DNA from: Bugula neritina
Lineage: Eukaryota; Animalia; Bryozoa
Direction: 5' to 3'
Assembly (NCBI GenBank): GCA_964035545.1
Contig: OZ037767.1
Span: 26,366,628 to 26,430,627 of the forward strand
Length of the DNA: 64,000 bases
Shown: piece after piece, positions 26,913 to 54,140 of the stretch
Layout of the letters: the number at the start of each line of letters is the position of its first letter
Position numbering within the stretch: the stretch's first letter is position 1
Notes under the pieces: generated by a model
What the model saw: the letters and a program-made list of their open reading frames with translations, nothing else
Database searches by the model: none
What the model was told of the DNA's origin: nothing
Made by a program: the position numbers and the translations under genes

Positions 26913-29520
26913 GTTGAATAAAAGAAACACATACTAAGTTATTGGAATTATAGAGAAGACGATTACAACAGCTAAACAGTTTTATATGTAGGTAGAACCC
27001 AGAGTTATGATTATATGTTCAATTACATTGTGCTTGGCCCTTATATTGCATTTTATATTATATAGTAGTATTATATTCTCAAATTATATTGAAAACAACC
27101 CACACTATCCCTAAAGCTATGCCTAATGCAAGTGTTACTTGGTAAATGGTACCCTGGATTTACCAAGCTGTCTTTTAACCTTTAAATATACACATATTTG
27201 GCTATCATGATTATGGAGATATATGCAAACATCTTTAACTTCATTTTCAAAAGTCTATGAGCTGTTAGAGAATAACATGTAAATAAAATGTATAAAAAAT
27301 TATTACAATGTTGTATTATTCTGCTATCAATTATAGTTACAGTTATAATGAACCAATTAACATTGGCATTGTTATTAGCTGCAGGACTAATTTATTTAAT
27401 TTTATGTTTCGTTTAATGAATTGTGCCAATTAACATTACTTTTTACATTGTTACTTTTAACAGAGAATTTTTTAACTGTAGATTCATTAGTTTTCTAGCA
27501 TACATATAATTTAAAAAATAATGTCAAATTATAGCCAAAGCAAAATTGCCAAAGGTGACCTTATCAATGAATGGTTTTGCTACTTTAAATTATTTTGGAT
27601 TAATCACATTCAATCATTTCAAAAAACAAATAAATATATCAACCTGCTTGAAAATTTCAAAGTCAAGTGATCAAATTATACAATTTCCATACATTTTGTA
27701 TTCTATTGCGTGCAGAGTTAGCTTTCATTGTTAGAACTAATGATTCTATGTGTAAAAATCTCAAGTATTGTAAAAATCATTCTGAATGAACATCAAACTA
27801 GTAGCACTGCTAGGCCTAATTGCTGCAATGTTAGTATACAGTCACAGCAAGCATGCTGCTGTACTTACTGCAAGGAAGGGTTCAACACTGCATACAGATA
27901 GTAAATATCCATCTGACATAGTAGACTGTAGAAGATCAATACAATTTATGTTCACTCTATCACTATGGAGCAACATTAATCATCACTTTACAGCTCTTTT
28001 ATATCATTTTAATGCAACCTGCAATATTTTTACTTTATATATCTGAATGCTATTTTGCATTCGATACAAATCATGCTATGTTATCATGCAATTTTTTCTT
28101 TCATCAAGTTGTTTCAATTTACATTCATAAGGTTTTGCTGCATAAGTGTAAATAAACATTTCGTGTAACTATATAATATTTGGTCTAAAAATAGTTTATC
28201 ATCAGTTGAGCCAACCCTTTCAGTTGCAAGTATCTGTCTATGTACACTGAATAAACCTCAATAACTATTAGTAATTTAAATGCTATAGAATAGTACATAA
28301 TTATGCACAATTGGAATGCATGTATAGACAGCACTGCAGGTAATACTGCTGCTACATACAGCAAGCATAATGAAGCTAATTGTCACTAATTAGCACATTC
28401 TAGGCTCTCAGTAGATAACAAATCACTTTCAGCTTTACTATTTGGGCTAGTGTCGGTTGTGTTGATTGGTCAATAAAATACTGCAATACTGGCAGGTTTG
28501 ACATGAACATACGATATAAAGTATATAATATAGATACTTGTTGAGCTGATTACTCTGTATTCATATATCCACATATATGGAACTTGTATAACACTATATT
28601 ACCAATTATAATAAAATATTGCTAGTGGAGTATCCAGAGAAAAAGACAAAACTCACAATTACAATGCCACATAGGAACTAAAATAGCAACAAAACTAGAA
28701 TTGTTATAATTCAACAATAATTCAACATATTAGAAAATATAAATATACTGAGAATAAAGAAAGGGCTATACTAATACATAAGTAACTCTACAAAAAAAAA
28801 ACAAAGATAGAAAGTGGGACCACTTATATTTAGAATGTATTGTCAATAAAGAAAGCCTACTGATTACTGTCCATAAAATAAAAACTATTACACAACAAAG
28901 TGAACTACTGCAAAAACAGTGACATTGGGTGGCCGATTAACGCTGGCAAAACATGAGGCACAGAGGTTAAGTTGGTTAACTAGAGTGCAGAATATTGAGC
29001 AGAAAAGATTATAGAAATTTGGCTAAAGGCAGTACTAAGCTACAGCAGTGTTCTTTATAAGTTCAACACTTTAGTAAAACTCTCAGCAATATTACATATG
29101 ATTTACATTAATAATGTAAACTGTTGTTTGAATCATGAGACTGTAGACCTATAGAAACTACACATTCAGACGCAATTTTCCCTTGCAAGTGGGGACAACT
29201 CAAAGTAGACCTGAAGTGCATTATAATAGGAATGTACAAGGAATTAGAAAAGCATGATAGGAATTCTCAAGGTGTTGTACAAATATAAACTTCCTTAAAG
29301 GGGTGGATGTGCAAATAAAATAAAATAACAAAAAATAACATAGAGAAAAAAATTTAAATTAAAAAAAGTTAATTGGCAGTAATCCTAGTAAGTTAATGTA
29401 GAGTTTATTTCCCACTATATTAACTAAAGTGTAATTAATAGGTGTTAACCTGGTGTGTAAAATAACAGAGTTACAACGTAAAGGAAATATTATGAAGATG
29501 AGAAAATGAAGTTATGCGAC

Positions 29521-29633
29521 AAGAACTGGCTAGTGGAGAGAAGCCAGAACTGGCTAGTGAAGAGAAGCCAGAACTGGCTAGTGAAGAGAAACCAGAACTG
29601 GCTAGCGAGGAGAAACTAGAGCTGGCTAGCGAG
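29521..29633. repeat. 21-bp tandem repeat spanning the intersectin stop codon
   Basis: About 5 copies of AGAACTGGCTAGYGRAGAGAARCC-like units. Confidence 0.92.
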
Positions 29634-32600
29634 GCAGTCGAATGCTGGGAACAGGATGTTGTGAACTGTTGTACAGCTGCAAGTCTAACTTGACAACAAT
29701 GTCACCAGTATTCACTTCCTGTAGCCGAGCATATTTCATCACCGGCCCTCTCTTCTCCCGAGTCTCTCGTAATATGTCTTTAACTCTAAGCTCAGTTCGA
29801 CCAAGAAAATCTGCAAAACAATAGCAAGGAATAACAAACTGTGAGAAACTGAAGCTATGTTGCCACTACAGGTTTATAAAACAGAAGCTATACAGAGATA
29901 TTGCCACTACAAAAAAAAAACTTAAAACAAAAAATACTTGCTGAAAGTAAATTTTTTAACAAATAAATGATTGAGTTTTAAGCATTCCCTTACAGCATGG
30001 TTTAAAACTTTACGGCACCAAATAACTTAGCACTATCTGATGTAATTATAAAACGTTCAAATCCCTCTAGAAGCAAAATCTCTTTCCAAATAATATGACC
30101 ATTATTTTATGGTTTGTTCTGGTAGTATGGTGAGAAATCATGTCCCCCAATAGGCAAAGACTCTCCAGCTCAATATAATTAACTTGCTTATATTCTAATA
30201 AATAATAATATATAAATATAAAATCTTTTAATGAGTAAAAAGAGATTTCGGTAAGTAAGAATTATAGCAATCAAGTACCATTAGGAGAAAATCTGTCCTG
30301 ATCAAAGACTGTGAAGCAGAGTACATCGTCTTCTACACTCTTTATAGGAAACTGCATACTGGAGTTCCACTTTGGATTCAGAGTATTTGGTATGACTTTA
30401 GTCTTATGTAGTGTAGTCCCCATACTCACTTCACAGTACGGGTCACTCTTTCCTGTAATATAATATATTTTATAAACATATTCAAGCTACCTTATTCAGT
30501 TATTTGTTTAAAAAAGTGCTTAATTTTTTCATTTCACGAAAAAAAAACAAAGCATCCAACAAAAAACAATTTGATCACCAAAGTAAACGCAGCTTAATTG
30601 TCTGATTACTTTAATAACATGCCTTAAAAATGATGATAAATTTTGTCCCTTTTACTAATGCCCTCAGTCATAATTATAAAGCTCAATAACTGATAAGACT
30701 AATGCATATAAATGCAATGTAAAAACTTGTATTGTATGAAAATACTTTAACCAAACTATACAATATAAGTAAAGCAAGCCACAGTTGAAAATGAAAAAAA
30801 TAACTAAAGCCATGAATTATCAGAAATTATATGATATTTAAAAATTAAAACATGGGACTTGGCAAAAGTTAGGAATCTTTGCAATATTTTAGGTATAGCA
30901 ATTAGAGTTACTTGAAAAAACGAAAGCCGATTGTTTTACTCTTGTTTACTAAAGTTGCAAATCAACGCTATCCTGACAATATTTCAACTGATAGTTAATT
31001 TGCACCAATTTATTGCTTATACAGAATGAAGAATAGAAATATAAAGAATATAAGAAGAAGATGTTAGTATTGTAGTAAGTATACCAGTAGTAGGTTTTAC
31101 ACCAGCCACATCCACTGCTTCTTTTAGAACTAATACTAATCTTCCTACAGGAGATCTGCTCAGAGCTGCCACAACACAAACCAATAAAGTCATCAAATCA
31201 AGCAAAGCACTGTACAACTGCATAGTCTGACGTATCTAGAACTCAGACGTCTCTTGGCCATTTGTTAGAACCAAGGCCATTTGTTAAACAAATTTCAAGA
31301 ATTTGGCGAAAATTCTAGATGATTCACAAACTGCACAGCATAAAACTGTATTGAATTGTATAAACTGCACAGTAATATATCAATTTAAACTTTTCCCAAC
31401 AAAATTTAAAAGTTGAATTCAATACGACTTTTTCCACGACAAAGTTGAAATATTCAGAGACATTGCCTGGGTTCTTAGATAATCAGACTGTGGGTGAGGG
31501 GAGCAAAGTAATGCAAAGCTAGCAAACACATGTCCTGCACAAGGATCTCTTACCATTGGCGTCTGACGCCGTCAGGCCGACGCCTTCCATGACTATGACT
31601 AGTAATCTACCAATTCCTTTGTGGCCAGGGCTGGTCACCACTGTAGCATTTGGTATATTGCACTCATACATGTGTGTATACAGAAAACAGGACGTAATAG
31701 CAGTGACTAATGCAAGAGAATAGCTTGTAGCTCTCAAGAAGATATACATTCTGGTAACATTTGAAAAAAGTCAAGCATGTTTCATGGCAAAGTGACAGTA
31801 TAGCGAACAGCCTATTTTTGGTACACACCCTTAACAAACAGTGTCCCATAAAACAGTGAAACAGTGAAGTTAAAAGCGTGTAGATGTTTTGTAGATGCAA
31901 CACGGTGCGAACTTATGTAAAGAGTCTGTGCCAGTGAATTTAGTTGAGACACTGTTTGAAGCTGAGAGAACTAATCAACTCTTACTAGTTACACTAGAAT
32001 TGCCAATTTTATAAAAGAAGCAAACAAATAACTAGTAATACAGCCAGTAGCTTTGCCAAAAAAAAACAAGTTTCATTTATTTAGCTATTAAATGGATGAT
32101 AAATTTACTAGCAGAGTTGGGAGTAGCAGGTTTTTGTGCTAGTTATATTTACTATATATTGAAGGTAAAAGTGTCTAAACAAGAGACATGACATGACATA
32201 GTGGTGCCTCAGTAGCTGCCTTTATGCCTGCTATCTGTAATTTCGACTTCAATTTCTTGGTTTTTTCAGATCTTGTTGTTTAAAATGGAAGCTGACTATA
32301 AGAGTTTTGAAAAATCACAAAACTGCACATAATTTTCTTTTGGAGCGAAAGATATTTTGGGAGTGAGATGATTAAACTTCACAAAAGCTGCCTTACAATT
32401 TACATTACTCCAATACTACAACTACTACAGCTGCTGCTACTGTTGCTAATGCTGCTATTGTTGCTGCTGCTACAACCGCAACTAAAATCAACTAGTGCCA
32501 CTATAACTACTGAGCTGCTATTACTAGTTCAGTCACAAGATTTTCTGCAACAGATAAAATAATTTTAGCCCTTACATGATTTGGCACGTTCTCTCTTCAC

Positions 32601-35600
32601 TTTCTCCATGGACAGAGCAGTTTCAAAAGCATTGGTTAGTCTTTTCATCCAGGCATTTCTATAAAACATTAATACAGTACTAGCACTTGTATGGTATCAA
32701 ATGGTCAATCCACGCTATAAACGCTATATAACAAAGCAATGCTAAAACAACAACAGTTCATTGCAAAAGATCCAACAACACGAATTTTCAACAAGAATGT
32801 GACTAAAGACTACTATGGAGTTATCAGAATCCCTGTCTCTCTTCAAATACGCCGACAACATGAGTGTTACCTTCAGTTGCTATGGTCTACGTAAGCATAT
32901 GTGCTGATCCCAAATGAAATAACAACATATTATCAAAGAAAATTAACATTTAGTCTAGATACAATTATCTGAAGTATTATATGCTACCCGTATGGCAGGA
33001 GCACTCACTTTTCTGTGGTACTGCTACACTTGAGGTCTATTATATTTTCAATATGGATTAGCTGGAAGCACACATTATCAGTATCGGGCTTCTCCAAGTT
33101 TACTGGTTCTCTCACACTGATTTCATTGAGGAACACAGGCTAAAATTTATATATATAGAATTGAATCAAATTAGCTTAGAATATGATCTTAATTCCTCTG
33201 ACTAGAAATTAGCCCTTGAAATAATTCTCAGCTTTAAGATGTTTTCACTTACAAACTAAAACAAAGATTAACTGTTTACTTTCATGGTGTACAGCTGAGC
33301 TTTTCTACCCATTAAATTCACTATACGTATTTCAACTGCGAGTGTTCCCTTTATCTCTACATAAGTGCAGCAAACATACACATGTGTAAATAATTGGAGT
33401 TTGCTGCTCTTGAAAAGTGTCTTAACATAAATTTGTTACAGAATTTTCAATTTCAAAATACTCAACAACATTGATATCCCAAAAGAAACAGTTATATATA
33501 ATCGGTAACAAAGCACTTGCTTCAGCTTTATACTATGCTTTCAAACTACAAACCATTTTATACATCTTGAATAATACTCCTTTAGCCTCTGGACGAAAAA
33601 CTTTGTCTGTGGAACTGTTGGATACCGGAGTTGTGAAGAGAAGAAAATCATTAAATAAGAAGGTGTAGAGCTCACGGTTTGACCTTGTCTATAACAATGA
33701 AAAGAGTCAGACATCAATGTGCAGCTGCAGTTGAATATATAATGTATGCAAAGCAAAAAAACATGAAATAGCAAAACTTATAAATAACATTCTTAAAAAG
33801 TAACCTAATGAGTATATATTTACTAAAATAATTTCTTTTATAAAATACTTTTTTTCTGCTCGAAACTTAAACATGAAAAGTAGTTATTTTTAAGTTTTAA
33901 CTATGCATTATGTTTTTTATTTTTAACATTTTGACAAGGCCTTGAATGAAATATTTAGTCAATACTATAACAAGTAAATATTCCACAGCTGTGTTAATTA
34001 TATTTGCTTAAAGTTGAAATAATTTTTAGACATGTGAGAACAATGTTTATAGACAAATAATATTTTAAAAATACAAATAAAATTAAAAGAGTATACTGAT
34101 AGGTTTATGACAATTCTAGAAAAAAGTCAACTTTTCTACATGGCTATAGTACTTGGTATATACCTTATAGTACTTGGTACATACCTTATAGTACTTGGTA
34201 CATACCATATAGTACTTGGTACATACCTTATAGTACTTGGTATATACCTTATAGTACTTGGTACATACCTTATAGTACTTGGTATATACCTTATAGTACT
34301 TGGTACATACCTTATAGTACTTGGTACATACCTTATAGTACTTGGTACATACCTTATTCAAAACTCCACTGTATATAAACTTTCTCTGGCCCAGTGCATT
34401 GGTAAGGGAATTGAAATTTATGTGCTAAAATAAAAGTAAATTAATAAATTATACTGGAGATATTTTGGCTATTGCTCAATCTGAACTTTCTACAAACACT
34501 GTAACCATTTATATAGATGAAAAATAAGACAACCATCCCATCCTATAGTAATTTATACTCGACTAATGCGTTGAACGAAACAACTAAAGCTACAGTATAC
34601 CTCAGTTAGACCTTCACAGGACACATGATTCTGAACCCACTCCAACTTGTCGGAGTTGTCTTTCTCTCGCACACCTTCATTCACCTGATTGGCCAATTCC
34701 TGGGCTTTGGTAGAAGCCTCGGTTATATGCTGATAGTCAGGGTGGGTGCTGGGAGTGTATTTCTCTATCTAATTATTAGCCAATCAAATAATTTAATAAA
34801 ATCTATATTAAAGAATGCCTGTAACACTGACATTAAGCTTATTAGGTTTGTTAGCCTTAACTGAAACAACATAAAACACATTAGAACTTACCACAGATTT
34901 AAAATAGTATAAATATTTAATTTGTTGTAAAGAGAGAAGAGAAATTAGAATTAAAAGAAATTTAGTGAAAGCTGCAACACCAAATCAGACTTATGAGAAA
35001 ACGCCATTATCTGTCAGAAAATGAGTGAACAGATAACCAGGCAATTAGTCTTTGATTCTAATCTTACCCTGCTGACTAGAAGTGGGTACTTGGTGATGCG
35101 CTGCATAGGTTTAAGAATATAGCTACTTAACGGCATACCATGCACTCTACTGTCCTGTTGACATTTCTACAAAAACACCAAAAATATCTGCTATTATTCA
35201 TTTTTAGAACATCCTAATAATAAGAAATCTACGTTTAAAATAAACTTAATTTCACGTAGTATTTAAATTTAAATTGATTAAAACTGAATTATATTTTGGC
35301 TTTACTCGAAGCATATTACTTATATTAAACAATTTAGTTATTAGGCTAAAAGAGAGAACAGAGCAACTAGGTAAAGTTTAAAACCTGTTTCAGAATATGA
35401 TGAGTCATGCATAAATAGTTGACTGCCTGAGCACCAATCACAATGAAGCAAATTACTTACTGATATGAATTGTCTCGCCTCACCGTCTGTTTCTACTCTA
35501 CTTTGTAAAAGCTGAGCAGCATGGAGTTGTCTGCTACAGAACCTTATGTATGGAGTCATGTTGGGAAACTGCAACATAATCTATCTACTGTATTAATACA

Positions 35601-38600
35601 ATCCAGTATACCTCATGTCACATGCGACACCAGCTTGTCATGGTGAGATAACTTCTTCAATACCAACAATTGGTTTTACAACTTGTAAACTACACCTTGA
35701 AAAAAGGTACAACATTGAAAAAATCTTCAAACATATTACTTATTTTAAAGAATAAACTATACCTATATGAAAACAAAGATGATGCTCCAGTAAAAATTTC
35801 AACTATAATATGTTAAAGTTTAGTATATGGAACAATATTTTTAGTGCAGCCTCATGATGATTGCCTGTCAAAACCAACCAAGCATCAGTTCTGTTCAACA
35901 TAACAATTTTTTTATTTTGCTCTGTTAATCCACTTTCGTTATGAGACAAAAAACTGCAATGACCATAACAGTTCAATATTACAAGACACAAGAGAGCATG
36001 CACGTATCTCATGCAAAGTCCATCCTTACATTCTCAATAAGAATATCACCAATAACATCCACAGGCTTGTCTTGGCCACATGTGTTCTTCCTCACTTTGA
36101 ATGCACTGCAAACAAAAGGAATTACCTGTATATATAGATAGAATATTATAGTTTCACAATCTTGCATGAAGCCAGAGATAATGATCAGTATCTGTTGGGA
36201 CATTACATGAGCTTGGCAAACTTTTGTTAAATCATTATAGCTTTAATTGCATTCTCATAGCTATGTTAGCTACATTATGTTTTTCTCTGTTGTGATTGGT
36301 TGATATACACCGATTTTGGCTACTACAAAAAAGCTATCTTTTTAGACTATTATAAACCCAGCACTTTCTGTTATTCATCCTCTTTTTTTCATTCAGTTTT
36401 TGATAATAAATACGCATCTATATTTCAAACACAACAGTATCAAACTATTTCAGAGAGAAGGCAAATATTGTCTCCCTCCGCGTATTATAACACGCCCATA
36501 TTATACACTAGTATCAAGTAATCACGAATAGAATCATGGGATTGGTAAGCTACACACTTGACTAGCTTCCTGTTACAGTGAATGAGCTCCCTCCAGTTAA
36601 CAAATATGGCCTCCAGTTCACTTTCCGGCATAGCTTTGCTTTCTTTCAGCGGCTTGTAAAACACCTTTGAATAAAAATTTTAAAGTGAAATAGCGCATAG
36701 GTCTGACTAAGCTTTAGGTACAATTAATTCGATTTGAAAGGAGTTACCTCTTCTCATGCAGAAGACGAGCTAGGAAAAATGTGTTGAAAATTAAAGTATT
36801 AGTGGTATACGAGTATTTCAAAATTAATTAAATTTTATCTGTGGGAGATTTAAACGGCCTCTAAACGAAACGACCTCTTTTCACTGACCTCTAAAGCTAT
36901 GACCATATCCTCAACATATGTTTTTTCTGTATTAATGAGCTCTTCAATAGCTTGCTGTCTCTTCTTCTCATCTTCTGTTACTAATTTGATAAGAGGTAAA
37001 GCAAGCATGTTACACTTCATATTATGGAGTTATCTCACCAGTGTTAATAAACAAGTGCCTCCAGGACACGATACATGGAACTAAGCCAGTTCTCAATCCA
37101 TAAGTCAGTGCTTAGACTACCTAAAGCATGGCAGATTACAGCAGGTACTCTATACCACCCTATCTAATAACTTTGTTTGGAAATAGTTTAGTTGGGCAAC
37201 TCAAGATATTTGGCTGATTTCAGCAACCGACAACCCATTAATAATATCCACATGATAAAATCATGTTTAAATTGTCTACCATACTGCATTCAAGAATTCT
37301 ATAGGACATTGTATTTGAATCTGTAAAACGGTATAGTTAACATAAAACATTGACTAAACATAAACTCAAAAGGAATTTTACACCATGTTTAAAAGACTAT
37401 TATTTGGTCAATAAAATTATATCGTGCATACAATAAAAGTCCTCATCACACATATATTATGCCAGATTTAATATAGTATTGTATTCCATCACCAGCAACT
37501 TAGACATTTTACGAGTAAATAATAATAAAAGCAGATAATCCATAAAACTGTAAATATAAGGAGTAGAATATATTTAGGGACAACATCAATAATTCTCCAG
37601 CTATATAATATAAACCGCTCTATTGAGAATATGACTTCTACCGTACTCAGTGCCATGTTACCTTTCAGTTCAACAAGAACATTTTAGTTGATCTATTAGT
37701 TGTCAAGTCAAGATTTTACAGACCGTCGTTAGAAGAAAGGTTAGTTTTGAAATCGGCAACAGACTTTAAGGTTAAAGAAGTCAGACTCACAATAGAGAGT
37801 GCAATAAAACCCATCATGTTAGGAAGTCAAATAGGGATTGCGAGTGAAAGTTACATACGCTAAGCAATTATAGTTCTTCTTTCAGAACAATTTATAGAAG
37901 ATGACTTTAGTGGAACTGAAAGCGAGACCGGAATACAGTCAACATTCTACTCACAACCCATATTTGCTCAATAAGCAGACCAATATCGTTAACTAACTCA
38001 ATTAACCATAAAAAATAACAAGCATTATTCAAGAGCAAAAATAATTGCAAACCAATAGTTGCATCTTTGGACAAAAGCTGATGATATTTAGTGTATGAAC
38101 TTATTTTACACGAGTGTAAAGGAAGGGGCGTATTACAGTTTATTTTATAAAACATTATCTTGCCAAATGAGCAAATATGATTGGCAGCTTTAGACCAATC
38201 AGAATGAAGTTGAGTAGAATGTGAACCAATCACAGCCCCGACACAGCATCCGCTAAAGTTTCCTCACCACAGTTTAAGCTACAAAATTATGAGTGTGAGT
38301 GATAAGCAGTGTGAAAAAAGTGAAACCGAAAAATTTGGTGTATGTGTGTATAAATATTGGACCAACAAAACAGAAGAAAAGACCAACTCACATGGTTCTG
38401 TGTACATTTGAACGTAATTGGCCGGAAAAACACCGGAGACATCGCCTAATTGGCCCATCCACCAATCAGGGTCGTTTTTATTGAGTATAGTAATAACATC
38501 TCCTTGGTTGAAAGTCAGCTCATCATCATTCTGTGCAGTATAGGGGTAGGAAGCCACAACTTTAGCTACAAGAATTACTTGGTTATGATACACGAGGGCC

Positions 38601-41600
38601 AAGAAACTGCAAGTACTGGTGCTAAGATCAAATATATAGTAGAAGTACTAGCACTAGTACAAGTACAAGTGTTATTATCAACATATCTTATACTGCGACA
38701 TAGTGAGTATAATACTTTCATTACATGAATGCATTGTAATCAGCATAGAAAAAATTCAAAATAAAATTTAGTAAAATAATAAAAAATTAAATACAAATTT
38801 TGAGCTATACATTACTTATGAATGAGCGATGAAACTCGAATATGTTTAAACATTGTTAATATTTGAGGATATAGAAGAAACTGTTTTCACTTCAAAGGGT
38901 ACTAGTAGTTTGTCATAAATTCTCTTAGTATTTACTATTTGAAATAAGAACATTGGCTAAGTATCTGTGGCATACAATTTGAATGGAGCAATTGCTTGGA
39001 AAAAAACATGTTTGTATTATAACAGTTACAATGTATTCTGTGAAAAATGGCTGTACTTCTGAGGAAATGTACTTTATAGCATGAATATATATAGCAGTGA
39101 TATTATCACTGCACTTTTAATTAAGGAAATGTATATTATATATATTGCAGATTTAAGAGATCACTATATGGTAAAATTTAACGTCAATATACATTTATAC
39201 ATATAACATTTAAACTTTAGCGAATGACAATTTAATAACTGAGGCTCTGCATTACCTTGTGGAGCTACTGCAGGTACTGCAGCCAAAGAGATGTTCTGCT
39301 GGATCCTGGGAGACTCAGGATCTGGTGTAGCAGGAGTGGAGGGTCGGGAGGACTTGATGCCTGACGTGGGCAATAACTTAACGTAATCCTTTGGAAACCA
39401 GCCTATCTGTTTCTTTTGACCTTTAGCCTACATGGTGACATGCATAAGCTATATACCATAGTGAGAAATTACATTAATAATGTGGAATATAAAAAAAACC
39501 ATAAACATGTATATAAAAACAGTGGCTCTTAGTTGAAAAGTTAAAATGCTGTTTTCAAATAAAACTAAAAATAATTGTTCAGAGAACTCTACAACTCATA
39601 CAAATTAGCATGTGGTTTAAAACTTTACAATAACTTTTTAGAACACTTGTATAATTGTATATTTTAATAAAATAAATAAACAAAACATAGGGCAAGGTTC
39701 TGGAAAGTTCCTGAGTATTACATACCACCAACTCTCCCTCCCACCAGCCAGACGCCGACTTCTTCTTCACTTGAATCAGTTGATTAAGTTTAAGGGACAG
39801 TTGCTCGGGCCCCGTAGCCTCATACGCTGCAATCACCTTCCCTATCTCCTTAGCCTGAGCACCCGATGGTGTTGGGTTGGGTGGTGCTGCAGGCGCCAAT
39901 GCTGGGCTACTTGTCTACACAAATAGTACATGACAAACATACATATTGCATGCAACCCTTTGATTTTAGATGTTAACAAAGGCTAGAAAAGGATAGAGAG
40001 TTGAAATACCAGACACCCGCCAAAAGAACGGTAAAGCAAGAAATAAACACACTAAGCAAGACACGTTGGGTAAGCTACATCTACTAACTGACTGGTTTAG
40101 CAAAGAACTGCAAATCCACTAATCAAATAAACAAATAACTATAACTTATGAAAAAAAGGTACACCAATAAATTATACATCCCATAGCTAGTTATTAGATA
40201 CAAAAGCGGTAGAATATTAAAAAGCAAACGAAACAGAAAAAAGCATAAGCAAACACATAGCATACTTTTATTGGGGTGTCAGTGGGTTTTCGAGGGGCAG
40301 CCCGTGGATGTTTCCTAGCCTCGTTGAAAGGACTAGTCGATGAGGTTGGGAATGCAGAGTTGTGAGATGGTGGGGTGAGTGGAGATGATGACACAGGTGC
40401 TAGAGACGCATTTGTTGGCATTGTGGGTAAAGTGAAAGTTGGGTGTGATACCAGCGCAGTAGGGTTAGACTGAGTGGGGGAGTTAATTGCTGGGTGATTA
40501 GGTGGCTGGGGTGGGGGGCTAGTGGCGCCCTCCTCAAACTGAAACATAAGCAACTAAATGAAGCACAGAAAGCACACAACATGCATTTATAAACTCAGTT
40601 ATAAAATATGAGCACAATGCTGTAAAATGAGCAGTTCATGTCAAAAAATATATGTTAATATTTTATATACAATATTGATGCAAAATGAACTGCTCACCAC
40701 TGCCATAGCATGTTTAGTGTTACTGACAGAAACATGTAAACATTCAAGCAGGCAACATGAAGAGCCAGCGAGAAACAACACACGTTAGATTATTACTTTA
40801 GCTATACTAGCATATCATACTAACACACTACAATAGCATACTGTACTAGCATACTCTACTAGCATACTGTACTAGCATACTGTACTAGCATACTGTACTA
40901 GCATACTGTACTAGCATACTGTACTAGCATACTGTACTAGCATACTGTACTAGCATACTGTACTAGCATACTGTACTAGCATACTGTACTAGCATACTGT
41001 ACTAGCATACTGTACTAGCATACTGTACTAGCATATTATACTAGCATACTCTACTAGCATACTGTACTAGCATACTATACTAGCATACTATACTAGCATA
41101 CTCTACTAGCACCCTATACTAGCATACTGTACTGGCATACTGTACTAGCATACTCTACTAGCATACTGTACTAGCATACTGTACTAGCATACTGTACTAG
41201 CATACTGTACTAGCATACTGTACTAGCATACTATACTAGCATATTAGGACAGAAAAATCCTCCAAACTCTTTGACACTAGAAAGGAAAGGGACTAAACCC
41301 TGACATTTGTTACTTGCAAGACTTTAGCCAAAATGAATTAGTTTGTTTTGTCAACATAGTGCATGCATTTGGAGAATTTGAGTCTCAGAAACAAACTATA
41401 AACAACACAACAACCTGTACATAACAACTCGTTGAAAGACTTAACGTAGCGCAACAAATACCCTAGCCTGATCTGTAGAGGTCCCGACATAGTTAGCGGG
41501 AAATATACCACTCCTGCTGCCGATGCTGCCCGTCCACCATTCACCACCTTCCTTGCTGCTCACCAGGATCAGCTCACCAACAGTGAAAGTCAAATCACCT

Positions 41601-44600
41601 TCAACATCTGACTGATAGTCGTGCATTGCTACATATCTCTCCGCTACCTGTATACATAATATTAAGGTGACTAGAGCGTATTACAGCAGAAGCAGTGTTT
41701 GTATATTGTATTATACAGAATAAATTATATCATACAGAAATAATATAGTATAATTTACAGAGGTAATATAGTTTATAAGACAGAACTAATACAGTATATT
41801 ATACAAAAATAATACAGTATATTATAGAGTAGTTATATAGCATAATATACAGAAGTAGTACAGTGTGCTATACAACAACTAACACAAGCAACACATGTAT
41901 ATACAACAATAATACCTATTGTATACAGTAATATACCATACCTGTTGCTTATTTGATTCTGGTGTGGCTACAGCCGCAGTGGTATCCCCAGGCACCTGGT
42001 CATAATACCTTGAAGCTGGTGCATCCTCTGATATAGAAGGTACTTTATCATAAAACCTGGAGCTATCCACAGCTGGCCTGCACAAAACACTCGTGTATTA
42101 GACAACTATAAACTCTCACAAGCTTATGACTTCAATGAAAACCCTTGTTGATTAAATATGTATTAATTTTTATCTAATCGATGATGCAATATTACACCGC
42201 AAACACAATTGTAACTGAGCGCCCCTTCCATCACCCCTAATGACCTTAACAAGAATCATGCTCATGTTTCTGGGAACGCAGGAGCCTTTACATTGCACCT
42301 CTCTACCCACATACAGCAATATATTAATTCATATACAGTGTGCATACTATTGAAGGGTCAACACTTATTGAAATTGCAAAGCAGTTATTCTATCAAAACA
42401 ATAGATTATTAATAAAGCTGGTAGAAAAAACTTCCACCAGAACTTACTTGGGCTCGGATTGGTTGTTAGAAGAGGATGTAGAATCTGTAACCTTGACATA
42501 TGCACTAGGGAACCAGCCCTGTTCTCCATTAGACAGCTTACCTTGCCACCACATGTCTTGCTGCATCAGAACTTTGATTGTGTCACCCTGAAATAAACTG
42601 CTAATTAGAGATCCTAACAAACCCCTTGTTTAGGCCTGGCTTAGACACATAACTTCAACATTTAGTTACAGATATCAAGTGCCTTCATCACTTATTTTAA
42701 TGATGCTAATAATTGCAATAATATAATAATGACAAAGATCTTTCCCTTTCACGATCAGCACATGATTAGTTATATTGCTGATAAAGAATAGAAGGCTGGA
42801 ATGGTATGAGTATGTAAGCAGGAGATAAAAAAGAAGACGTAAAGAGGCTGAGCAAGTGTTGGAGACAAGAGAGAAAAAGACCAAACATCGATGGATAGAT
42901 ACCATAAGAACGGATATGAAAGTGTAAAAAATTAATAGCAAGGACACAAGCAACAGAGTTAGACGCAAATCACTTAGTGTGTTGGCTATGCAGAACCCGT
43001 GACCCACAAGGACTGATACAGAAAAGGTGAGAAACGGGGAGAAACATGATCAGTTACAGTAGCTTACCTCATTAAATGATAGATGATTACTCTTTTTGGC
43101 TCTCCAGGGATACATGGCAACACAAGTAAGTCCAGCCGGGGCCGGGTCACCTGCGTCCAGTGTCGGAGAGGATGCTCTAACCTCGTCGAATGCTGACTCA
43201 CTAAAAATAATAAATAACAAGTTGTATCCAACCACATCAATTCTTGCCATGACAGATAAAATAAACGACCAATTAGAGAGACATACAGCCAAGCACTAGA
43301 GCTCACATTTCCAATAATATAGCTAAATCTACAGTTTTGTGGTGGGAGATATTTTTCATTTCATTTTTATAAAACATCACCGTAGTATAATTATTGACTT
43401 TAAATAAGGACAGAATAAGGCATATTGCAAGTGATGAGAATGTATATTAGTAACCTTCTAGACATAGCAGATGTGACAGCTGCCACAGGTGCTGCCACAG
43501 GTGCTACTGCAGGTGCTGCCACAGGTGCTGCTACAGGTGCTGATGCAGGTGCTGCTACAGGTGCTGAAACAGGAGTTTTTTCACCAGAAGCAATTGGTTC
43601 ATATACTTCTCTTTGTTTAGTTACATAATTAGCAGGAAATATTCCACATTTGTCTCCTTTCCAGCCAGCCAACCAGCCAGGTTCTGAAGACCCTTGCTCG
43701 TCTGGGTACACCTGTATAGAATAATTAACCACAGGTATAGCCATTAACACAAAATATCATTGGCTACAAATCACATGTTTTGAAATGGTAGTCATTTTTC
43801 TTAAATAGTTATGAGCCAATAGCGCACCATTGGTCACACAAATATTCAGTAGGAGTTTCAAACTAGAGAAGACAAATCTTAATGAGCAATGTGTCATCGG
43901 CAACATGAAAATGTTATTGACTCTGAAGACACAGTCTCGTGGTTTTGCTTCAGTTCGATAATTTTATTACAACCTGCAGAGTTGCTGGTAAGTAATCTAA
44001 TTCAGACTAGTAGAATATTAGATTGTTTAGAATATTGACGGGCTTTTATATTGAGTTATTTTGTGAATATACTTTTAAAATGCTAATTATTGGAATTTAG
44101 TAAATGCTAAACCAAATGAATTTAATCAATTCAAAACATCTAAAGGTCAAAAAATTATACATTATTATATTTGCATATTACAGAAAAAATAATAAATATG
44201 AAATATAGCTTCATTAATGCTTACAATTTAGAATCCAATACTCACCTTTACTTTATCTTCCATAACCAAGTCTAGTTCATCCGCATTTCTAGAAGCAAAG
44301 TCGTACTGAACTTCATAGATTTCTACTTTTCTCGTAGATGGCTGAGAGACAGTTTTTACAGGTGAGGCTCTAGCTGGGAGTTGCCCTACCATACTCTGAC
44401 TCGGAGTAGATACCTCGGTGTTACCAAAAGCTGTTTCTTTCTTCTTAGGAGGGGGAAGCAAGGCAGTAGTCTTCTTAACTGGTTCAACTGAAGGTTTATC
44501 CCAGGCAGATTCAGAAGGGGTAGGGTTTCCCCAAGACTTGTTAGCAAAAGCATCTGTGCTACTGGTTGTTCCCCACAGAGAATTCTGGTTACCACCAGAG

Positions 44601-47600
44601 GTGGTTACAGCTGGCTGACTAGACCAGAGGTCTGCAGAGAGAGAGTCGGAAGTGGCCCAGCCAGTGGAGCCTGTGGAGCCCCACGCACTGCCCGACTGAT
44701 CTGTTGGTTCACTGGCAATCGGTGCAGCAGAGGTGGCAGGAACACTGAAGTCAATGTCTTTAAAGGCCGACCATTTATCTTCTACATAAAGCATCATTGC
44801 CATGACAACATGATGTAAACAACTATAGAGAAATATAACACATCTGTATATAGTTTGGTGTGTACAGAGATAACATCAAACAGACCTTCTTTTTTCTTCT
44901 TCTCTTCTTCTATTTTACGCTTCCTCTCCTCTTCCTCCTTCCTTTGCTGCTCTTTATCAGCCCTGTTAGTGTAAATAACTCATTCAGATATGCTAGTAAC
45001 AACACACATACACAACAGCTGATACTACTGACACATACACAACAGCTTACACTACTGACACATACACAACAGCTTATACTACTGACACATACACAACAGC
45101 TTATACTACTGATACATACACAACAGCTTATTCTACTGATACATACACAACAGCTGATGCAATCAAAGCCTATCATTTGCTCAACTGAGATGGGGCAGGC
45201 ACTAATGAGAGTATGAGATTACTAATAATGTGATTTGAGTTGCTTTATGCTTAAATATACTCCTTTGTAATGTGCCTATGTCCTACATAGTATTACAATG
45301 CGGCACGTATATTATGTTATATAATCACCATTGCTGACGATATATTATGAGTGTAGCTAGTGCTCATTTGTTCTGTATTGAATAGCAGAACTGCAGTGTT
45401 AATCAGTAGACCAGTGCAAAACGGAGCAGTTCACTAGAAGTATGCTATTGCATATCTTCAGTTAGACACAGACCTATACCAACGACCATTCCAGAACACA
45501 ATCTATACATTTAAATACAAACCGAATCTTTTCATCCACCCTCCTTCTCTTCTCCTTGTCCCACTCAGCTCTCTTATTCTGTAGACGAGATCGAACCTGA
45601 GACTGTGAACTCGTCAACTGACTCACCGATTCCTTTAAACTCTGAAAGGAGCAAAACAAACAGAGCGTGCAGTGCGAGACATGCTCATACTGTACAACTA
45701 TATAGCAGGTGGGGTATATGTTAGTGTGTAAGCATTGTGTGCACTGGTTAGTTTTACAGGTAAGATACATACGGCTAGCGTTTCTTTGTCCGGATTAGTT
45801 GAAGATTTATTGCTTTCTATTTCCGCCAGTTGCTGCCTTAACTTCTCAACCTAAAATAATGAAAATATAATACTACAGCACCACAATTGGTAAAACTAGA
45901 ATATGCACATAGTGACGGTCGGCAAATTTAAATTAGCTAAATAATAAGGAAAAAACATAGGAATTCAAGCAAAATTAAAAAAAAACATTGATAATTTAGT
46001 TGTATCTTTTAAATTTTTATTAGTTTAAAGCAAAAACCCACATACATCAGCAGCTAAATTGTGAAAAATAGCTAAAGACTGAAGATTTCGAGTGTGTACT
46101 AAATTACATAGAGCCCTGTACAATCTGAAAATACGATAAGCAATCAGGTAAACAGTTAGCAGAGAGGCAAGGAGAGCTGACCTGCTGCGTCTTGCTGGTG
46201 TGCAAACTCTGCTGCTGTTTAAAACTCTCCGACACAGGATTCTGGGACTGCCGTGTTTGCAGCAGCTGAGAAACATGTGAGAAGTCAGCGCATAGTTTAT
46301 TGTATAATTTCTCATCTTCCTAGAAAACAAGAGCAGAGAGTGTAGATAACTCCTCGGACCTGATATATTATGAGATGACCAAGTCTGAACTAAAAAATTC
46401 TTGTGATGAGGAACTGTCGTGTGATAGCCTGAGTGAACATATGCTATTTTATAAACAAATGCTGGAAACAAACAAAAAAGAAAAATCAGGCAAAACCTCA
46501 TCATTAGAAAGTGCAGATACTACCATACTACACTACATGAGTGCCATACTACACTACATGAGTGCTGGCTTTTAACAAATAAAATTGAGTAATCTATTAG
46601 TGGCTTCCTGGCAATGCATTGAGTTTGAAAACCAGGTCTGGTAAAAGTATAATACTTTGCTAATGCTACTTACACTTTTAGAACTTTCATTGGCCGAGAC
46701 TGAAGCTATCAAACTGTCCCTAGTGGCCCTCATGTCATCAATGTAGCCTGTGTTCCGTATAACATTCTCTTTGCCTTCGGCTATCCGGGCAACCAACTCA
46801 TTCTTTTTGTTGTCCATAGTTTCTATTTCATACTTGAGATTGTTTACTTGACTTTCTAACATCTGCACAGCTTCCTGATTAAAAGTATTGGTATGAGAAA
46901 AACATTGAGATAGTCTAAGTCAGGACTGTCCAACAGGCAGCTCTAGGGCCGGATGTGGCCCCTAGCCTACATTTATGTGGTTCTCAAAAGCATAAAGCTC
47001 AAGTTATTTTTCACAGTGCACAAGAATTAGAGTGAAAAGCCACCTTTTGAATGTCTTTTTATACAGGCTGGACACCCCTGGCCTAAGTTCTTTATTTTAT
47101 TATTAAATTTTGGTTTGGGGCGTGGGTTTAAATTTTTGCAAAAACACAACTTCTTTTGCTACATTTTTCATCTAGAACACAGGCTTTTCTCAATTTCTCC
47201 ATTACTGCACCTACCTCCAGCAAAATAGTTCAACAATAAAAATATCTACCAGAAACATTATTCATCTATGATACTTTTCAAAAGTTGCTGGAATTAGTTC
47301 AATGCATGTATTCACTGATAACTGTAAACATATTTTTCACTATCAATTACCTCATGTCTTTTCTTCTCTGCCAATAATGTCAGTTTCCTCTGCCTCTCCC
47401 ATTCCTGCTGACGCTGGCGTTCCATCTCTTTACGAGCTGTTTCCTTGGCCTATCATAACCAACAAATAAACACATTATTTTACCACTAATGGTAAATTAC
47501 TACTGTGCACAGCAAAGATCACAACTCAGCTCTTAAGCCTGGCTGCTGATGAAGTGACATATGTATATTCTCACAGACCTCCAGAGCTTTTCTCCTTTGC

Positions 47601-49832
47601 TCTTCCCTCTCAGCCTCTAGCTGTCGCTGTCTCTCCAACATCTTTTCCTGTTCGGCTAATCGCTTTCTTTCCTGTTCCCTCCTGTATTTACAAACAGACA
47701 TACATACATACATGTAACACGTGTATGTATGTATAAAATCACACATACATGTAATTGGTATATGTATAATACACACATACATGTAATACGTATATGCATA
47801 ATACATATATACATGTAATTGGTATATGTATAATACATATATACATGTAACACGTATATGTATAATACATACATCTACATGTATATGTTGTACATATAAC
47901 AGCACTTGAAAATAAAAAATATGAAGAGTAGTTAGTTCAAAGTTTAGTAATGCTTCATTTTCAGTCTCTATTCAATTGATCACCTGATAGCTTCACGCTT
48001 CTCCTGTTCAGCTCTTTCCTTGGCCAGCCGAGCTTCTTCTTCCTTCCTCTGCTGATCTCTAAGCTCCGCCCTCCTCCTCTCCAACTCAGCATTTCCTTTA
48101 ACACAAACACTATGAACTAAAAACTACTCTATTTAAACAATAAACAACACAATAGTTTCAATAGTCTTATTATTGTAATCTAACTGAACACATATAATGC
48201 ACGCTACTACCTTTGGCAAAGTTCTCGCGCCGTTTATCCTCTAGAGTTAAATTAGTAATCGGCGCAACTTCTTCTATGAGTTGAGGAGCTGCCTGAGACT
48301 GGACACCAAATCCACCCGGAATCAAGTCTCCGAAAGAATCGGCAGGACGGCTGGCAGCAACTGCAACTACAGAGACCACTGTTACACATTAATTCTGATC
48401 AAAACACATTGAAAAGTTAGTTTCCAAACTCACAAGAAAAGTCTACATGTGATTTAATAATAATTTGAAACATTCTTTTCTGGCCGAGAATGGCTAATTA
48501 CTGCAGAGTAAGACAAGCTGCATAAAAACATGCTTCAAAATTTCTATTGATTTGAGCAACCTACTTTTTCATGACAGAATTATTATGATTACTATAGCAA
48601 CATGATGTACCATTTATTGGGGCCGCAGTTACGGCACCACTATTAGATCGAGATCGAGACCTCAGGCTAGGAGGAATAAAATTGGGTGGTAAAGCAGCTG
48701 GCAAAGGCTGTCCCAACTTTGCCATGTCAGCTAAGAACATTGCTAATGAGAATTCTTCTGAAGTTAATTTACCATCACCATCCACGTCAGCTAAACTCCT
48801 AAACAAAATAAAAGAAAATGAAACCTCACAATGAACTGATTACAATATTAATTAGCAATATTATTAGAACTATTTCAAAACACCATTTACCTATTATCAA
48901 GTTAGATAAACTAAACCCACCATATTTGAGCCAGTATGTTATGAGGTAAGCCGCTAGATAAGAGCAGTTGCCTGGCATCCAATCCAGTCAAATAACCAGT
49001 ACGTTTTCTGTCCTCTTTGTTAAACATCTGATTATACTTTAGTCTGCTAGCCTGTGGAACTGCCCAATCAGTTGGCCCGTCAACAGATCTAAATCAAATA
49101 TGAGATAAAATATTAAAAGTAAAAAAGTAATAACATAGACTTCCAAAAATCCCATACAAGCAAATGTATTTATTATCTCACCTTGCAGGAGAGTGAGGGG
49201 CGGCAAGAGCTGGATTAGCTGAGGGGGGTAATCTAGCTGGTAATGTAGCTGAAGACATCATAGAGAAACTACCACCTGTCATACCCATGGGAAAACCACC
49301 TGCTGAAGGTGTCATTCCATGAGGCAATGTGCCAGATGCACTGGGCATTAGAGGCTCAAGTAACATGCTATGAGGCAGCACATTAGGTATTTGATGACCG
49401 GTCAGTTTCCTTTTTATTAACGTCATGGCAATAGAAAATTCTTTTCTGTCCATTTTACCGTCAGCTGTGAGATCAGATAACCCCCTGTAATATAACGTTC
49501 ATTTTTAGCAGTAAAACATCGAAACAATAAAATTAAAGTGGAGTTTTTAACTCATCAATTGAATCAAAAATGAAAACATATATTAACTTACCATATCTGC
49601 CCTAAAACTGTTTGGGGCAAATTAGACTGTATGAAGAAACCCCTCGCCTGTTCTCCTACAAAAGAAAGTCCAAAAAATTTATCTTGTTCAGCTTTTTAAT
49701 AAAATTTACATTACAATCACATTTCAGATGAAAAGGGCATGGCTTACCAGTTATGAAAGGTCCATGAGTAAGAGTCGCAAACTGGGAGTCATGCTTGGCT
49801 CGCTCCTCTGCTGTTATAGTCCAAACATCCAT
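29626..49832 (-). CDS. ITSN1: Intersectin, long form (2 EH, coiled coil, 5 SH3, DH, PH, C2)
   Basis: Starts [18 protein letters not shown] (ATG 49832). EH motifs [13 protein letters not shown] and [18 protein letters not shown]; [13 protein letters not shown] plus a KELRQ-type coiled coil; five SH3 domains (e.g. [18 protein letters not shown]); [24 protein letters not shown]...[18 protein letters not shown]; PH LFNDFLL; C2 [12 protein letters not shown]...[12 protein letters not shown]; TAG at 29626-29628. Probably co-orthologous to vertebrate ITSN1 and ITSN2. Confidence 0.97.
31085..31165 (-). CDS. Alternative (duplicated) intersectin C2 strand-1 exon B
   Basis: GGCAG|CT...ACTG|GTATAC, 81 nt, phase 1-1. 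Encodes [27 protein letters not shown](G), homologous to exon A at 31554-31640. Confidence 0.75.
34145..34357. repeat. 21-bp minisatellite x10 containing the intersectin PH-exon 5' splice site
   Basis: Unit on the - strand is AAG|GTATGTACCAAGTACTAT; the first donor GT is at 34352-34351. Confidence 0.97.
38139..38278 (-). other. Putative alternative terminal exon for short intersectin isoform
   Basis: Pyrimidine-rich acceptor TTTTGTAG|CT TAA after a 113-nt intron from the SH3E donor; AATAAA on the - strand at 38144-38139. Confidence 0.6.
40835..41243. repeat. 13-bp minisatellite (TACTAGCATACTG)
   Basis: About 30 near-perfect copies in an intersectin intron. Confidence 0.98.
42775..43030 (+). 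mobile_element. Degenerate 3' end of an RTE-clade non-LTR retrotransposon, antisense in an intersectin intron
   Basis: Translates as [15 protein letters not shown] ... (RP)[14 protein letters not shown] ... RDP. This matches the RTE ORF C-terminal pattern RRLRWxGHVxRR...GRPKxRWxDxIxxD...ADP, disrupted by stops and a frameshift. Confidence 0.65.
43478..43566 (-). repeat. Coding 12-bp repeat (APVA)n in the SH3A-SH3B linker
   Basis: GCACCTGTRGCA-type units lie inside the exon at about 43455-43711. Confidence 0.9.
45003..45157. repeat. 27-bp minisatellite (ACACATACACAACAGCTTATACTACTG)
   Basis: About 6 copies, intronic; accounts for the spurious Cys-rich ORF. Confidence 0.93.
46921..47080. mobile_element. 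Non-autonomous hAT (Charlie-like) MITE, 160 bp
   Basis: TIRs CAGGACTGTCCAAC and GCTGGACACCCCTG (11 of 14 complementary). 8-bp TSD GTCTAAGT (46913-46920) and GCCTAAGT (47081-47088). Subterminal GGGCCGGATGTGGCCC motif. Confidence 0.85.
47698..47898. repeat. Degenerate CATA/TATG-rich tandem repeat
   Basis: Imperfect ~35-bp units (ACATACATGTAAYWSGTATATGTATAAT) next to an intersectin acceptor. Confidence 0.8.
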
Positions 49833-52475: not shown

Positions 52476-54140
52476 TTAGAGCTTCCCTCTAATTAAACCT
52501 TCTTGCATTACAGTAGCTACTAGTTCACCAGAGTCTGTCCAGATACGACCTTGACACAGTGATCTGCTGTTTGCCATGTTGTCACATACAGCTTCATATA
52601 GAACCCATTCATCAACCTGAAACAAAGTACAGATATATAGAATAATAAAATAATAGCAACAACAGTGGAACCACCAAAATACTTACGGCTTCACGTAAAC
52701 TTCCATTAAATTTTCATGTCACAAATATTAAAAATAAAAGTTTTAGAAAGATCACAAGTCTGCAGGTACATTATGAATCATCATAAGTGTATCGAGGGAG
52801 CTTCCTGCTCACAAAGTCAAACAAGCAGGTTTTGAAATAAAGTATACACCATTTCCATTAGTATTTTTCTCATTAAGTAATGTGTTTAGGGCAGAATCTA
52901 ATAACTCACTTCACTTTAGGCATGTAGTCATACTTAAAATTGCTTGCTTGCTCACTGTAAATTCAATCAACTTACTACAGTCACATTCTAATGTTTTTGG
53001 ACATCAACAGACATAGCAGTTCTCACCCTGAAAGGTCTGTGGAACCAGATGCTGTGATCTAAGGATACCATCATGCTTATGGGGGCTTTACTCTGGTGAG
53101 CTGTAGAAGAGTACAGCAGTGACCAGTCAGAGATATATGATGCTGCAGCTCGGTGCTCATTTTGATTGTCTCCTACAAAAACATGTATTGTCATACATGC
53201 TTAATAAATGTGCTTGCTTAGCTGAAGTTTTAATTTCAATTTTATATTCAGTATTCAAGCTTAAACTTCAGAACATATAAGCAATTACGGTCTCTAACTA
53301 CGATGTAAATTAGCGTATCTATAAACCTAATTCAATTCAATTTGTCATGGTTTTGACCTGACTTCACCAGGCACATAACGCTTTGGCTGGCAAAAGAAAA
53401 GTTAAAAGTTTATTATTTTCTGTTAGGCTGAATTAAAAGACTGTTATTTAATTTTTTTATGTCAGCAAATAAATTTATATTTCATCTTTACTACACTAAC
53501 CTATGGGATTTCGAACTTTAAACCATGATGTTATATTATTGGTGCTGTTGGACTTATTCCCCATGTATACTTCTATGTCAAGAGGTTTAATGTCAATTGG
53601 CATGTAGTTCATGAAGTTCCTAACTTTCTCAGCTTGATTTGAGTCTTTCTCAAAGCTAGATAGAAGCAAAGCAAGATATTCATGAAGACTTGATAACTGG
53701 CTATGATGTGCTACTTTAGGCATTGCAACCTGATAGTCAAAAATATTAGTTTTTTCCGCTGCTTCATTATGGAATGATGCTTGAAGAGTGAGTATAGGTT
53801 TTCCTTTCTGTATAGCAGATATTGATCTAGAACTGAAGCTACCACCATCTCTTGTACGAGACACTTTGTATATAACTGGAGAGTTGGGATCTCCGGGTCG
53901 TAGAAAATAGCTGTGAATACTATGCAAATTCAGATTGTCTGCAACTGTCCTACTTGCAGACATCAAAGCTTGGCCAATAATTTGTCCACCAAAGGTTCCA
54001 CGAGCCCTTTGAGCTTTCCAAAATTTATCTGCTATGTATAGATCAGTGTCTAACTCTTTTACACCTAGAACATCTGAAACAAGATCAAGCACTTTAATCT
54101 CTTCTTTTGTAGGCTCATCATCTAACATCTTTAATGCCAT
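52476..54140 (-). CDS. ACOT8: Acyl-CoA thioesterase 8 (TesB family), 308 aa
   Basis: Exons 53501-54140, 53027-53172 and 52476-52616. Motifs FGGQIIGQAL, HSIHSYFLRPGD, RTRDGGSFSSR, YISD, MVSLDHSIWFH and MQEGLIRGKL*. Confidence 0.95.

What the first reader, a model, noticed from the sequence alone, without database searches (positions are those of the whole stretch)
31085..31640. Duplicated, probably mutually exclusive exons that switch the intersectin C2 domain between Ca2+-competent and Ca2+-deficient forms
Seen: two phase 1-1 exons lie between the PH-end exon and the KSDPY exon. Exon A (31554-31640, 87 nt) encodes [29 protein letters not shown](G). Exon B (31085-31165, 81 nt) encodes [27 protein letters not shown](G). 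Both carry the GRL-hydrophobic-E strand 1 of a C2 domain. Established: canonical C2 domains use five aspartates for Ca2+ binding. With exon A all five are present (SDANG, KSDPY, VFD, QDR, NDF); exon B replaces the first with a KP-containing loop, reminiscent of the basic loops I recall in vertebrate intersectins. Inference: splicing toggles Ca2+/lipid sensing of a Cdc42-GEF endocytic scaffold. I know of no description of this for intersectin.
Basis: partly seen in the sequence, partly recalled or inferred. Interest (0 to 1): 0.85.

Follow-up and report, generated by a model that had tools for sequence, protein, structure and literature searches.

The report
Swappable calcium-loop exons in intersectin
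In this bryozoan, and in many other invertebrates, the gene for the endocytosis scaffold intersectin carries two alternative copies of one small exon, so cells can build its C2 domain with or without a key calcium-binding residue; the splice choice is real and old, but its effect on calcium binding has not been measured.

Summary
The genome matches Bugula neritina (216 Mb, 321 pieces). Exons A (31554-31640) and B (31085-31165) each encode strand 1 and loop 1 of the intersectin-L C2 domain. RNA contigs join the upstream exon to A (4/4 runs) or to B (2/4), and each to the KSDPY exon. No A-to-B joint and no double skip were listed; a form retaining the A-B intron is present in all four. Both exons are kept under purifying selection in two related loci with unalignable introns. 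Alternative copies of this exon also occur in molluscs, brachiopod, nemerteans (up to three copies), arthropods and amphioxus. Most such species pair one exon with the first Ca2+-ligand Asp with one lacking it; which copy holds it differs by lineage. Ca2+ switching is inferred: B keeps four of five Asp, and nothing was assayed. The kind is known (dysferlin C2A/C2Av1; Syt1, Syt34, Esyt2 exons); I found no report for intersectin. The scan had not noted it on other DNA.

The parts
31554..31640 (-). Exon A: C2 strand 1 + loop 1 with the first Ca2+-ligand Asp (SDANG); strong donor GTAAGA
   Evidence: RNA joints on both sides in 4/4 runs; conserved in L001, L004
31085..31165 (-). Exon B: alternative strand 1 + loop 1 without Asp (VKPTTG); weaker donor GTATAC
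   Evidence: joints in runs X1 and X8; pN/pS 0.11/0.69 and 0.17/0.87 against L004 and L001
31166..31553 (-). A-B intron (388 nt); retained in some transcripts, with an in-frame stop about 11 codons after A
   Evidence: contigs across it in 4/4 runs; frame check
32576..32658 (-). Upstream constitutive exon (end of PH domain, C-terminal helix)
30279..30452 (-). Downstream constitutive exon (KSDPY...SPN): Asp 2, 3 and 4 of the C2 site
   Evidence: Pfam C2 4.8e-18; best PDB hit human intersectin 2, 3JZY
29626..29810 (-). Last coding exon (Asp 5, rest of C2, stop)
29626..49700 (-). Host gene, intersectin long form (EH, EH, coiled coil, SH3 repeats, DH, PH, C2); upper bound approximate
   Evidence: single copy of the C2 exon in the genome

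Best explanation
A tandem exon duplication gives intersectin-L two interchangeable versions of C2 strand 1 plus Ca2+-binding loop 1. The spliceosome joins the PH-end exon to A or to B, then to the KSDPY exon (shown). Skipping both creates a stop at the joint (shown in sequence). The A form has the full five-Asp site and should bind Ca2+ and membranes in a Ca2+-dependent way (inferred from the canonical motif). The B form has an Asp-free, Lys-bearing loop and should bind less or no Ca2+, possibly with the Lys filling the pocket as basic residues do in dysferlin C2Av1 (inferred). Cell- or stage-specific choice would then set whether this Cdc42-GEF scaffold responds to Ca2+ (inferred; the A:B balance differs between runs). 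What enforces exclusivity is not identified; protein splicing factors acting on a strong A donor and a weak B donor are the default guess.
For: Joints PH-A, A-K, PH-B, B-K present; A-B and double skip not listed. Purifying selection on both exons with synonymous sites near saturation, and VKP.TG invariant in three loci. One exon with Asp at the canonical position plus at least one without in 3 bryozoan-type loci, L009, Lineus, Lingula, 14 of 15 molluscs and amphioxus. Cnidarian proteins have the Asp, so loss is derived. The two amphioxus exons are sisters (UFBoot 98), i.e. a separate duplication that again gave Asp/non-Asp. A B-type natural isoform (Lineus) models as a complete C2, rmsd 1.0 to 3JZY. 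Precedent: dysferlin C2Av1 (PMC3898210; bioRxiv 2022.01.18.476802).
Against: No binding data. B keeps four Asp. 11 of 14 mollusc 'non-Asp' exons have another acidic residue one or two places away. Some species have Asp in both copies (Folsomia, Tubulanus) or neither (Tachypleus, Centruroides, L008). The Asp is also lost without any duplication in echinoderms and vertebrates. Many database models of other species include both exons in tandem, so exclusivity may be leaky there. Contigs drop rare forms, so a rare A-B joint is not excluded here.
Confidence: 0.6

Rival explanations
1. The exons tune rather than switch: both forms bind Ca2+ (or neither does in vivo), and the swap changes lipid preference, Ca2+ affinity, or the PH-C2 linker and partner binding, since each exon also sets the length and sequence of the linker.
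For: Four Asp remain with B; linker length differs consistently (upstream copies 7-9 residues before the strand, downstream copies 5-6); pairs persist in chelicerates where neither copy has the Asp and in Folsomia where both do.
Against: The Asp/non-Asp pairing recurs in most lophotrochozoans and in amphioxus; the bryozoan B loop has no acidic residue at all.
Confidence: 0.27
2. The exons are two cassette exons that are not strictly exclusive: co-inclusion happens, the downstream copy then forms strand 1 and the upstream copy becomes linker, so the real choice is whether the downstream exon is included.
For: Co-inclusion is in frame; tandem models in oysters, Octopus, chiton, Lingula, Tubulanus, Tachypleus and others; in the model of the Lingula tandem form the second copy makes the strand and the first is disordered (the alignment biases this).
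Against: No A-B joint in four runs here although the intron between them is visibly retained; no tandem form among listed isoforms of Lineus, amphioxus, Mytilus, Centruroides. Tandem models can be annotation artefacts.
Confidence: 0.1
3. B is a decaying duplicate or splicing noise.
For: B joints were assembled in only 2 of 4 runs; its donor is weak.
Against: pN far below pS in all three comparisons; three of three strain differences synonymous; homologous exon in other phyla.
Confidence: 0.03

Closest known systems
Dysferlin C2A / C2Av1
   Same: Alternative exons replace the first strand region of a C2 domain and give a Ca2+-binding and a non-binding form; basic residues block the pocket in the variant (PMC3898210; bioRxiv 2022.01.18.476802).
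   Different: From my own knowledge those are alternative first exons at the N-terminus of a ferlin, in mammals; here an internal tandem pair in a Cdc42-GEF endocytic scaffold, and Ca2+ behaviour is unmeasured.
Mutually exclusive C2 exons of invertebrate Syt1, Syt34 and Esyt2
   Same: Tandem duplicated, mutually exclusive exons altering a C2 domain, arisen several times in invertebrates (PMC2823689).
   Different: Different genes; the Syt1 exon alters the central part of C2B. Here loop 1 and its Asp are swapped.
Vertebrate ITSN1-L / ITSN2-L
   Same: Same architecture; C2 folds onto 3JZY; known splicing makes short and long forms and alters EH, SH3 and DH parts (PMC3645719).
   Different: One exon at this position in all vertebrate proteins seen, with Arg/Lys for Asp 1 and Asn for Asp 2; no C2 exon choice described in the reviews read.
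Piccolo C2A splice variants (from memory, not checked)
   Same: Splicing changes Ca2+ affinity of a C2 domain.
   Different: A short insert, not a duplicated exon pair.

Membership tests
Intersectin long form | EH domains, coiled coil, SH3 repeats, DH-PH-C2 in one gene | tested here: met
   Pfam EH, SH3, RhoGEF, PH_13, C2, searched exon by exon; best PDB hit intersectin 2
Mutually exclusive exon cluster | Tandem homologous exons with the same phases and similar length | tested here: met
   87 and 81 nt, phase 1-1
Mutually exclusive exon cluster | Each exon joined to both flanking exons in RNA | tested here: met
Mutually exclusive exon cluster | No co-inclusion and no double skipping | tested here: inconclusive
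   Neither joint listed in four runs, but contigs drop rare forms; the A-B intron is retained in some RNA; tandem models exist for other species
Mutually exclusive exon cluster | Both exons conserved under purifying selection | tested here: met
Ca2+-binding C2 domain (form A) | Five acidic ligands at canonical spacing in loops 1 and 3 | tested here: met
Ca2+-binding C2 domain (form A) | Measured Ca2+ binding or Ca2+-dependent lipid binding | not testable with these tools
   needs protein
Ca2+-independent C2 variant (form B, like C2Av1) | Loss of Ca2+ binding; basic residue in the pocket | not testable with these tools
   Asp 1 absent and a Lys present; joined form not folded; side-chain positions not returned by the tool
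Docking-site/selector clusters (Dscam type) | Conserved competing intronic base pairing | tested here: inconclusive
   No intron-intron helix better than shuffles in three loci, best 35/200; no conserved intron motif; short stems would be missed
Steric-hindrance clusters (alpha-tropomyosin type) | Branch point of the second exon very near the donor of the first, with a long AG-free zone | tested here: not met
   Intron 346-478 nt; AG-free zone before B only 40-44 nt
Frameshift/NMD-enforced clusters | Co-inclusion breaks the frame | tested here: not met
   A+B is in frame; only the double skip makes a stop

The most novel reading that the evidence does not exclude
Intersectin-L has carried a splice-controlled Ca2+ switch since the protostome ancestor, and the pairing of one Asp exon with one Asp-free exon arose at least three times: upstream copy with Asp in bryozoans, brachiopods and nemerteans; downstream copy with Asp in molluscs; a separate duplication in amphioxus. 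Vertebrates are fixed in the Asp-free state, so the human C2 domain, often called Ca2+-binding, would be the 'off' form.
Probability: 0.35. Interest if true: 0.75.

Novelty: new member of a known kind. Interest (0 to 1): 0.58.

Why it matters
Reviews suggest that a Ca2+-binding C2 domain lets intersectin-L couple exo- and endocytosis (PMC3753573), yet the vertebrate domains lack the two loop-1 Asp residues. These invertebrate genes supply natural matched pairs that differ only in strand 1 and loop 1, so the question of whether and when this domain senses Ca2+ becomes directly testable, including in molluscs used in neurobiology. It also adds an old, apparently convergent case to the known habit of re-tuning C2 domains by exon duplication, and it flags that many database models that string both exons together may be wrong.

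Tried and rejected
Competing RNA pairing: a first scan hinted at stems around A (8 shuffles); a lenient scanner was uninformative; the stricter test gave nothing. Distant branch point: not met. Minor-spliceosome incompatibility: B's GTAT donor resembles the U12 start, but no U12 branch sequence precedes the KSDPY exon (read) and other species have GTAG there. RBFOX motifs: not conserved. A third exon between PH-end and A in the window: none. Orthology by similarity scores: equivocal. Tree without loop columns: too few columns. No annotated bryozoan intersectin protein appeared among the listed hits. Look-ups of Dreissena and amphioxus loci failed, so amphioxus exon order is unknown. L015/L016 showed no strand-1 exon within the DNA held. 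Fuson 2014 and Nakhost 2003 could not be read. Atlas search for taxonomy was uninformative. As the operators asked, the spliced model was searched exon by exon by reference; the joined A and B proteins were not sent to any search or folding tool (exons were joined only inside local scripts for frame and score checks), so natural isoforms of other species stood in for folding.

Full report
Source and gene. The window's genome has 216,009,554 bases in 321 pieces, which fits the Bugula neritina assembly of 216.00 Mb in 320 scaffolds plus a mitochondrion (PMC11480708); I take it as that bryozoan (inference). The minus strand from about 49,700 to 29,626 holds intersectin-L: EH, SH3, RhoGEF, PH and C2 matches exon by exon, with human intersectin 2 (3JZY) as best solved relative. 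The C2 exon is single-copy.

Observation. Exons A (31554-31640) and B (31085-31165) are as described, phase 1-1, between the PH-end exon (32576-32658) and the KSDPY exon (30279-30452). Either gives an open frame to the stop. Both together are also in frame; skipping both makes TGA at the joint. With A the five Asp are at canonical spacing; with B loop 1 is one residue longer, has no acidic residue and holds a Lys.

RNA. Contigs of four runs from four studies were laid on 29630-34050. PH-to-A and A-to-K joints are in all four. B-to-K is in X1 and X8, and in the same two runs a loose end at 32576 matches the first 30 nt of B (27/30; next best 18/30), which is the PH-to-B joint. No A-to-B joint and no double skip is listed. 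Contigs across the A-B intron are present in all four runs; that form meets a stop about 11 codons after A and is either a stalled intermediate, an NMD target or a C2-less product. Limits: these are contigs, so depth is no measure of level and rare joints are lost; the animals differ from the reference by a few percent (the species is a complex of cryptic types, PMC11480708). The three differences in B are all synonymous, while the intron carries many substitutions and indels.

Near relatives. Two further loci with 93-97% identical KSDPY exons (L001, L004; bryozoan by inference) hold A then B. Their introns align no better than shuffles, synonymous sites are near saturation, and pN/pS is 0.11/0.69, 0.17/0.87 and 0.11/0.90 for B and 0.09/0.90, 0.35/1.02 and 0.33/0.82 for A. 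The B loop VKP.TG is invariant. B is not a dead duplicate.

Wider distribution. Genomic loci show two copies in L008 (bivalve-like) and L009, and three in Lineus and Lingula, in the order non-Asp, Asp, non-Asp. Annotated isoforms show alternative copies in gastropods, bivalves, Octopus, a chiton, an annelid model, horseshoe crab, scorpion, ticks, a springtail and amphioxus. Vertebrate, echinoderm and hemichordate proteins showed one version each; a cnidarian-like genomic ORF has no intron at this place, and cnidarian proteins have the Asp. One copy with the canonical Asp and at least one without is the state in the three bryozoan-type loci, L009, Lineus, Lingula, 14 of 15 molluscs and amphioxus. 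Exceptions: both with Asp (Folsomia, Tubulanus), neither (Tachypleus, Centruroides, L008). In molluscs the downstream copy has the Asp; in bryozoans, Lingula and nemerteans the copy before B has it (order seen in loci and tandem models, inferred for separate isoforms).

History. On only 26-28 columns, exon A groups with the Asp-free upstream mollusc exons (96/88), and forcing all Asp exons together costs 20.9 log units, p-AU 0.053. Reciprocal loss is therefore favoured but not shown; a three-exon ancestor with different losses also fits, and similarity scores were equivocal. The two amphioxus exons are sisters (98), pointing to a separate duplication. Vertebrate exons do not group with B, so the KP likeness to ITSN2 is probably convergent. 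The last copy has a weaker donor (GTAT or GTAG) in 7 of 7 loci, the earlier copies GTAAG or GTGAG.

Mechanism. Shown: alternative use of A or B. Inferred: A gives a five-Asp Ca2+ site, B a weakened or blocked one. In dysferlin C2Av1 basic residues salt-bridge to the Ca2+ ligands (bioRxiv 2022.01.18.476802), which offers a role for B's conserved Lys. Caution: four Asp remain, residue counts do not settle binding, and 11 of 14 mollusc Asp-free exons have an acidic residue nearby. A natural B-type isoform from Lineus models as a full C2 domain (pLDDT 87.9; rmsd 1.0 to 3JZY). How exclusivity is enforced is open: no frame penalty, no distant branch point, no significant intron pairing. Many database models of other species carry both copies in tandem; they may be artefacts or real leakiness, and in a model of the Lingula tandem form the second copy makes the strand (biased by the alignment).

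Known and new. Exon choice in C2 domains is a known kind: dysferlin C2A/C2Av1 (PMC3898210) and mutually exclusive exons of Syt1, Syt34 and Esyt2 (PMC2823689). Searches for intersectin with such exons found nothing relevant, and the reviews read list splice variants in EH, SH3 and DH only (PMC3645719) or simply call the C2 domain Ca2+-binding (PMC3753573). The library lacks most subscription papers, so absence is not proven. The alternative sequences already sit, uncommented, in automatic annotations. The scan's earlier notes hold nothing on this for other DNA in this genome.

Left out. The joined spliced proteins were not sent to any search or folding tool; searches were exon by exon by reference.

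Verdict. Real, expressed, conserved exon pair; new member of a known kind; Ca2+ switch likely (about 0.6) but untested. Interest 0.58.

Noticed in passing
window 34145-34357: Minisatellite of 21-nt units, each holding a donor-like site. In all four RNA runs the contig joins the exon ending at 34353 (the first donor) to the exon starting at 33688; no use of later donors was seen, but these strains may lack the repeat.
   Followed up: partly
window 31166-31553: The A-B intron is covered by RNA contigs in all four runs while the neighbouring introns are mostly empty; in X2 the contig runs on past B's donor.
   Followed up: partly
L010 36389-40571; L011 34197-36514: Lineus and Lingula have three copies of the strand-1 exon; the Lingula RefSeq model strings two together and omits the first.
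   Followed up: yes
P0232, P0242, 3JZY: Vertebrate intersectin C2 domains have Arg/Lys and Asn at the two loop-1 Asp positions although reviews call the domain Ca2+-binding.
   Followed up: partly
P0398, P0404, P0409 (ticks): Tick intersectins keep the exon pair but have a degenerate loop 3 (Asn and Glu at Asp 3 and 4).
   Followed up: no
window 29520-29625: 30-nt tandem repeat starting right after the intersectin stop codon.
   Followed up: no
window 52479-55290 (minus strand): Acyl-CoA thioesterase (tesB/ACOT8-like) gene just upstream of intersectin.
   Followed up: partly
window 31261-31270; L001 3610-3619: A CTAAC branch-like motif lies about 103 nt before B's acceptor in both loci (71 nt in L004); the shared 10-mer scores no better than shuffles.
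   Followed up: partly
P0394, P0395 (Dreissena); P0404 (tick): Models with a few extra residues between loop 1 and the KSDPY exon, suggesting a further micro-exon or alternative splice site in the same loop.
   Followed up: no
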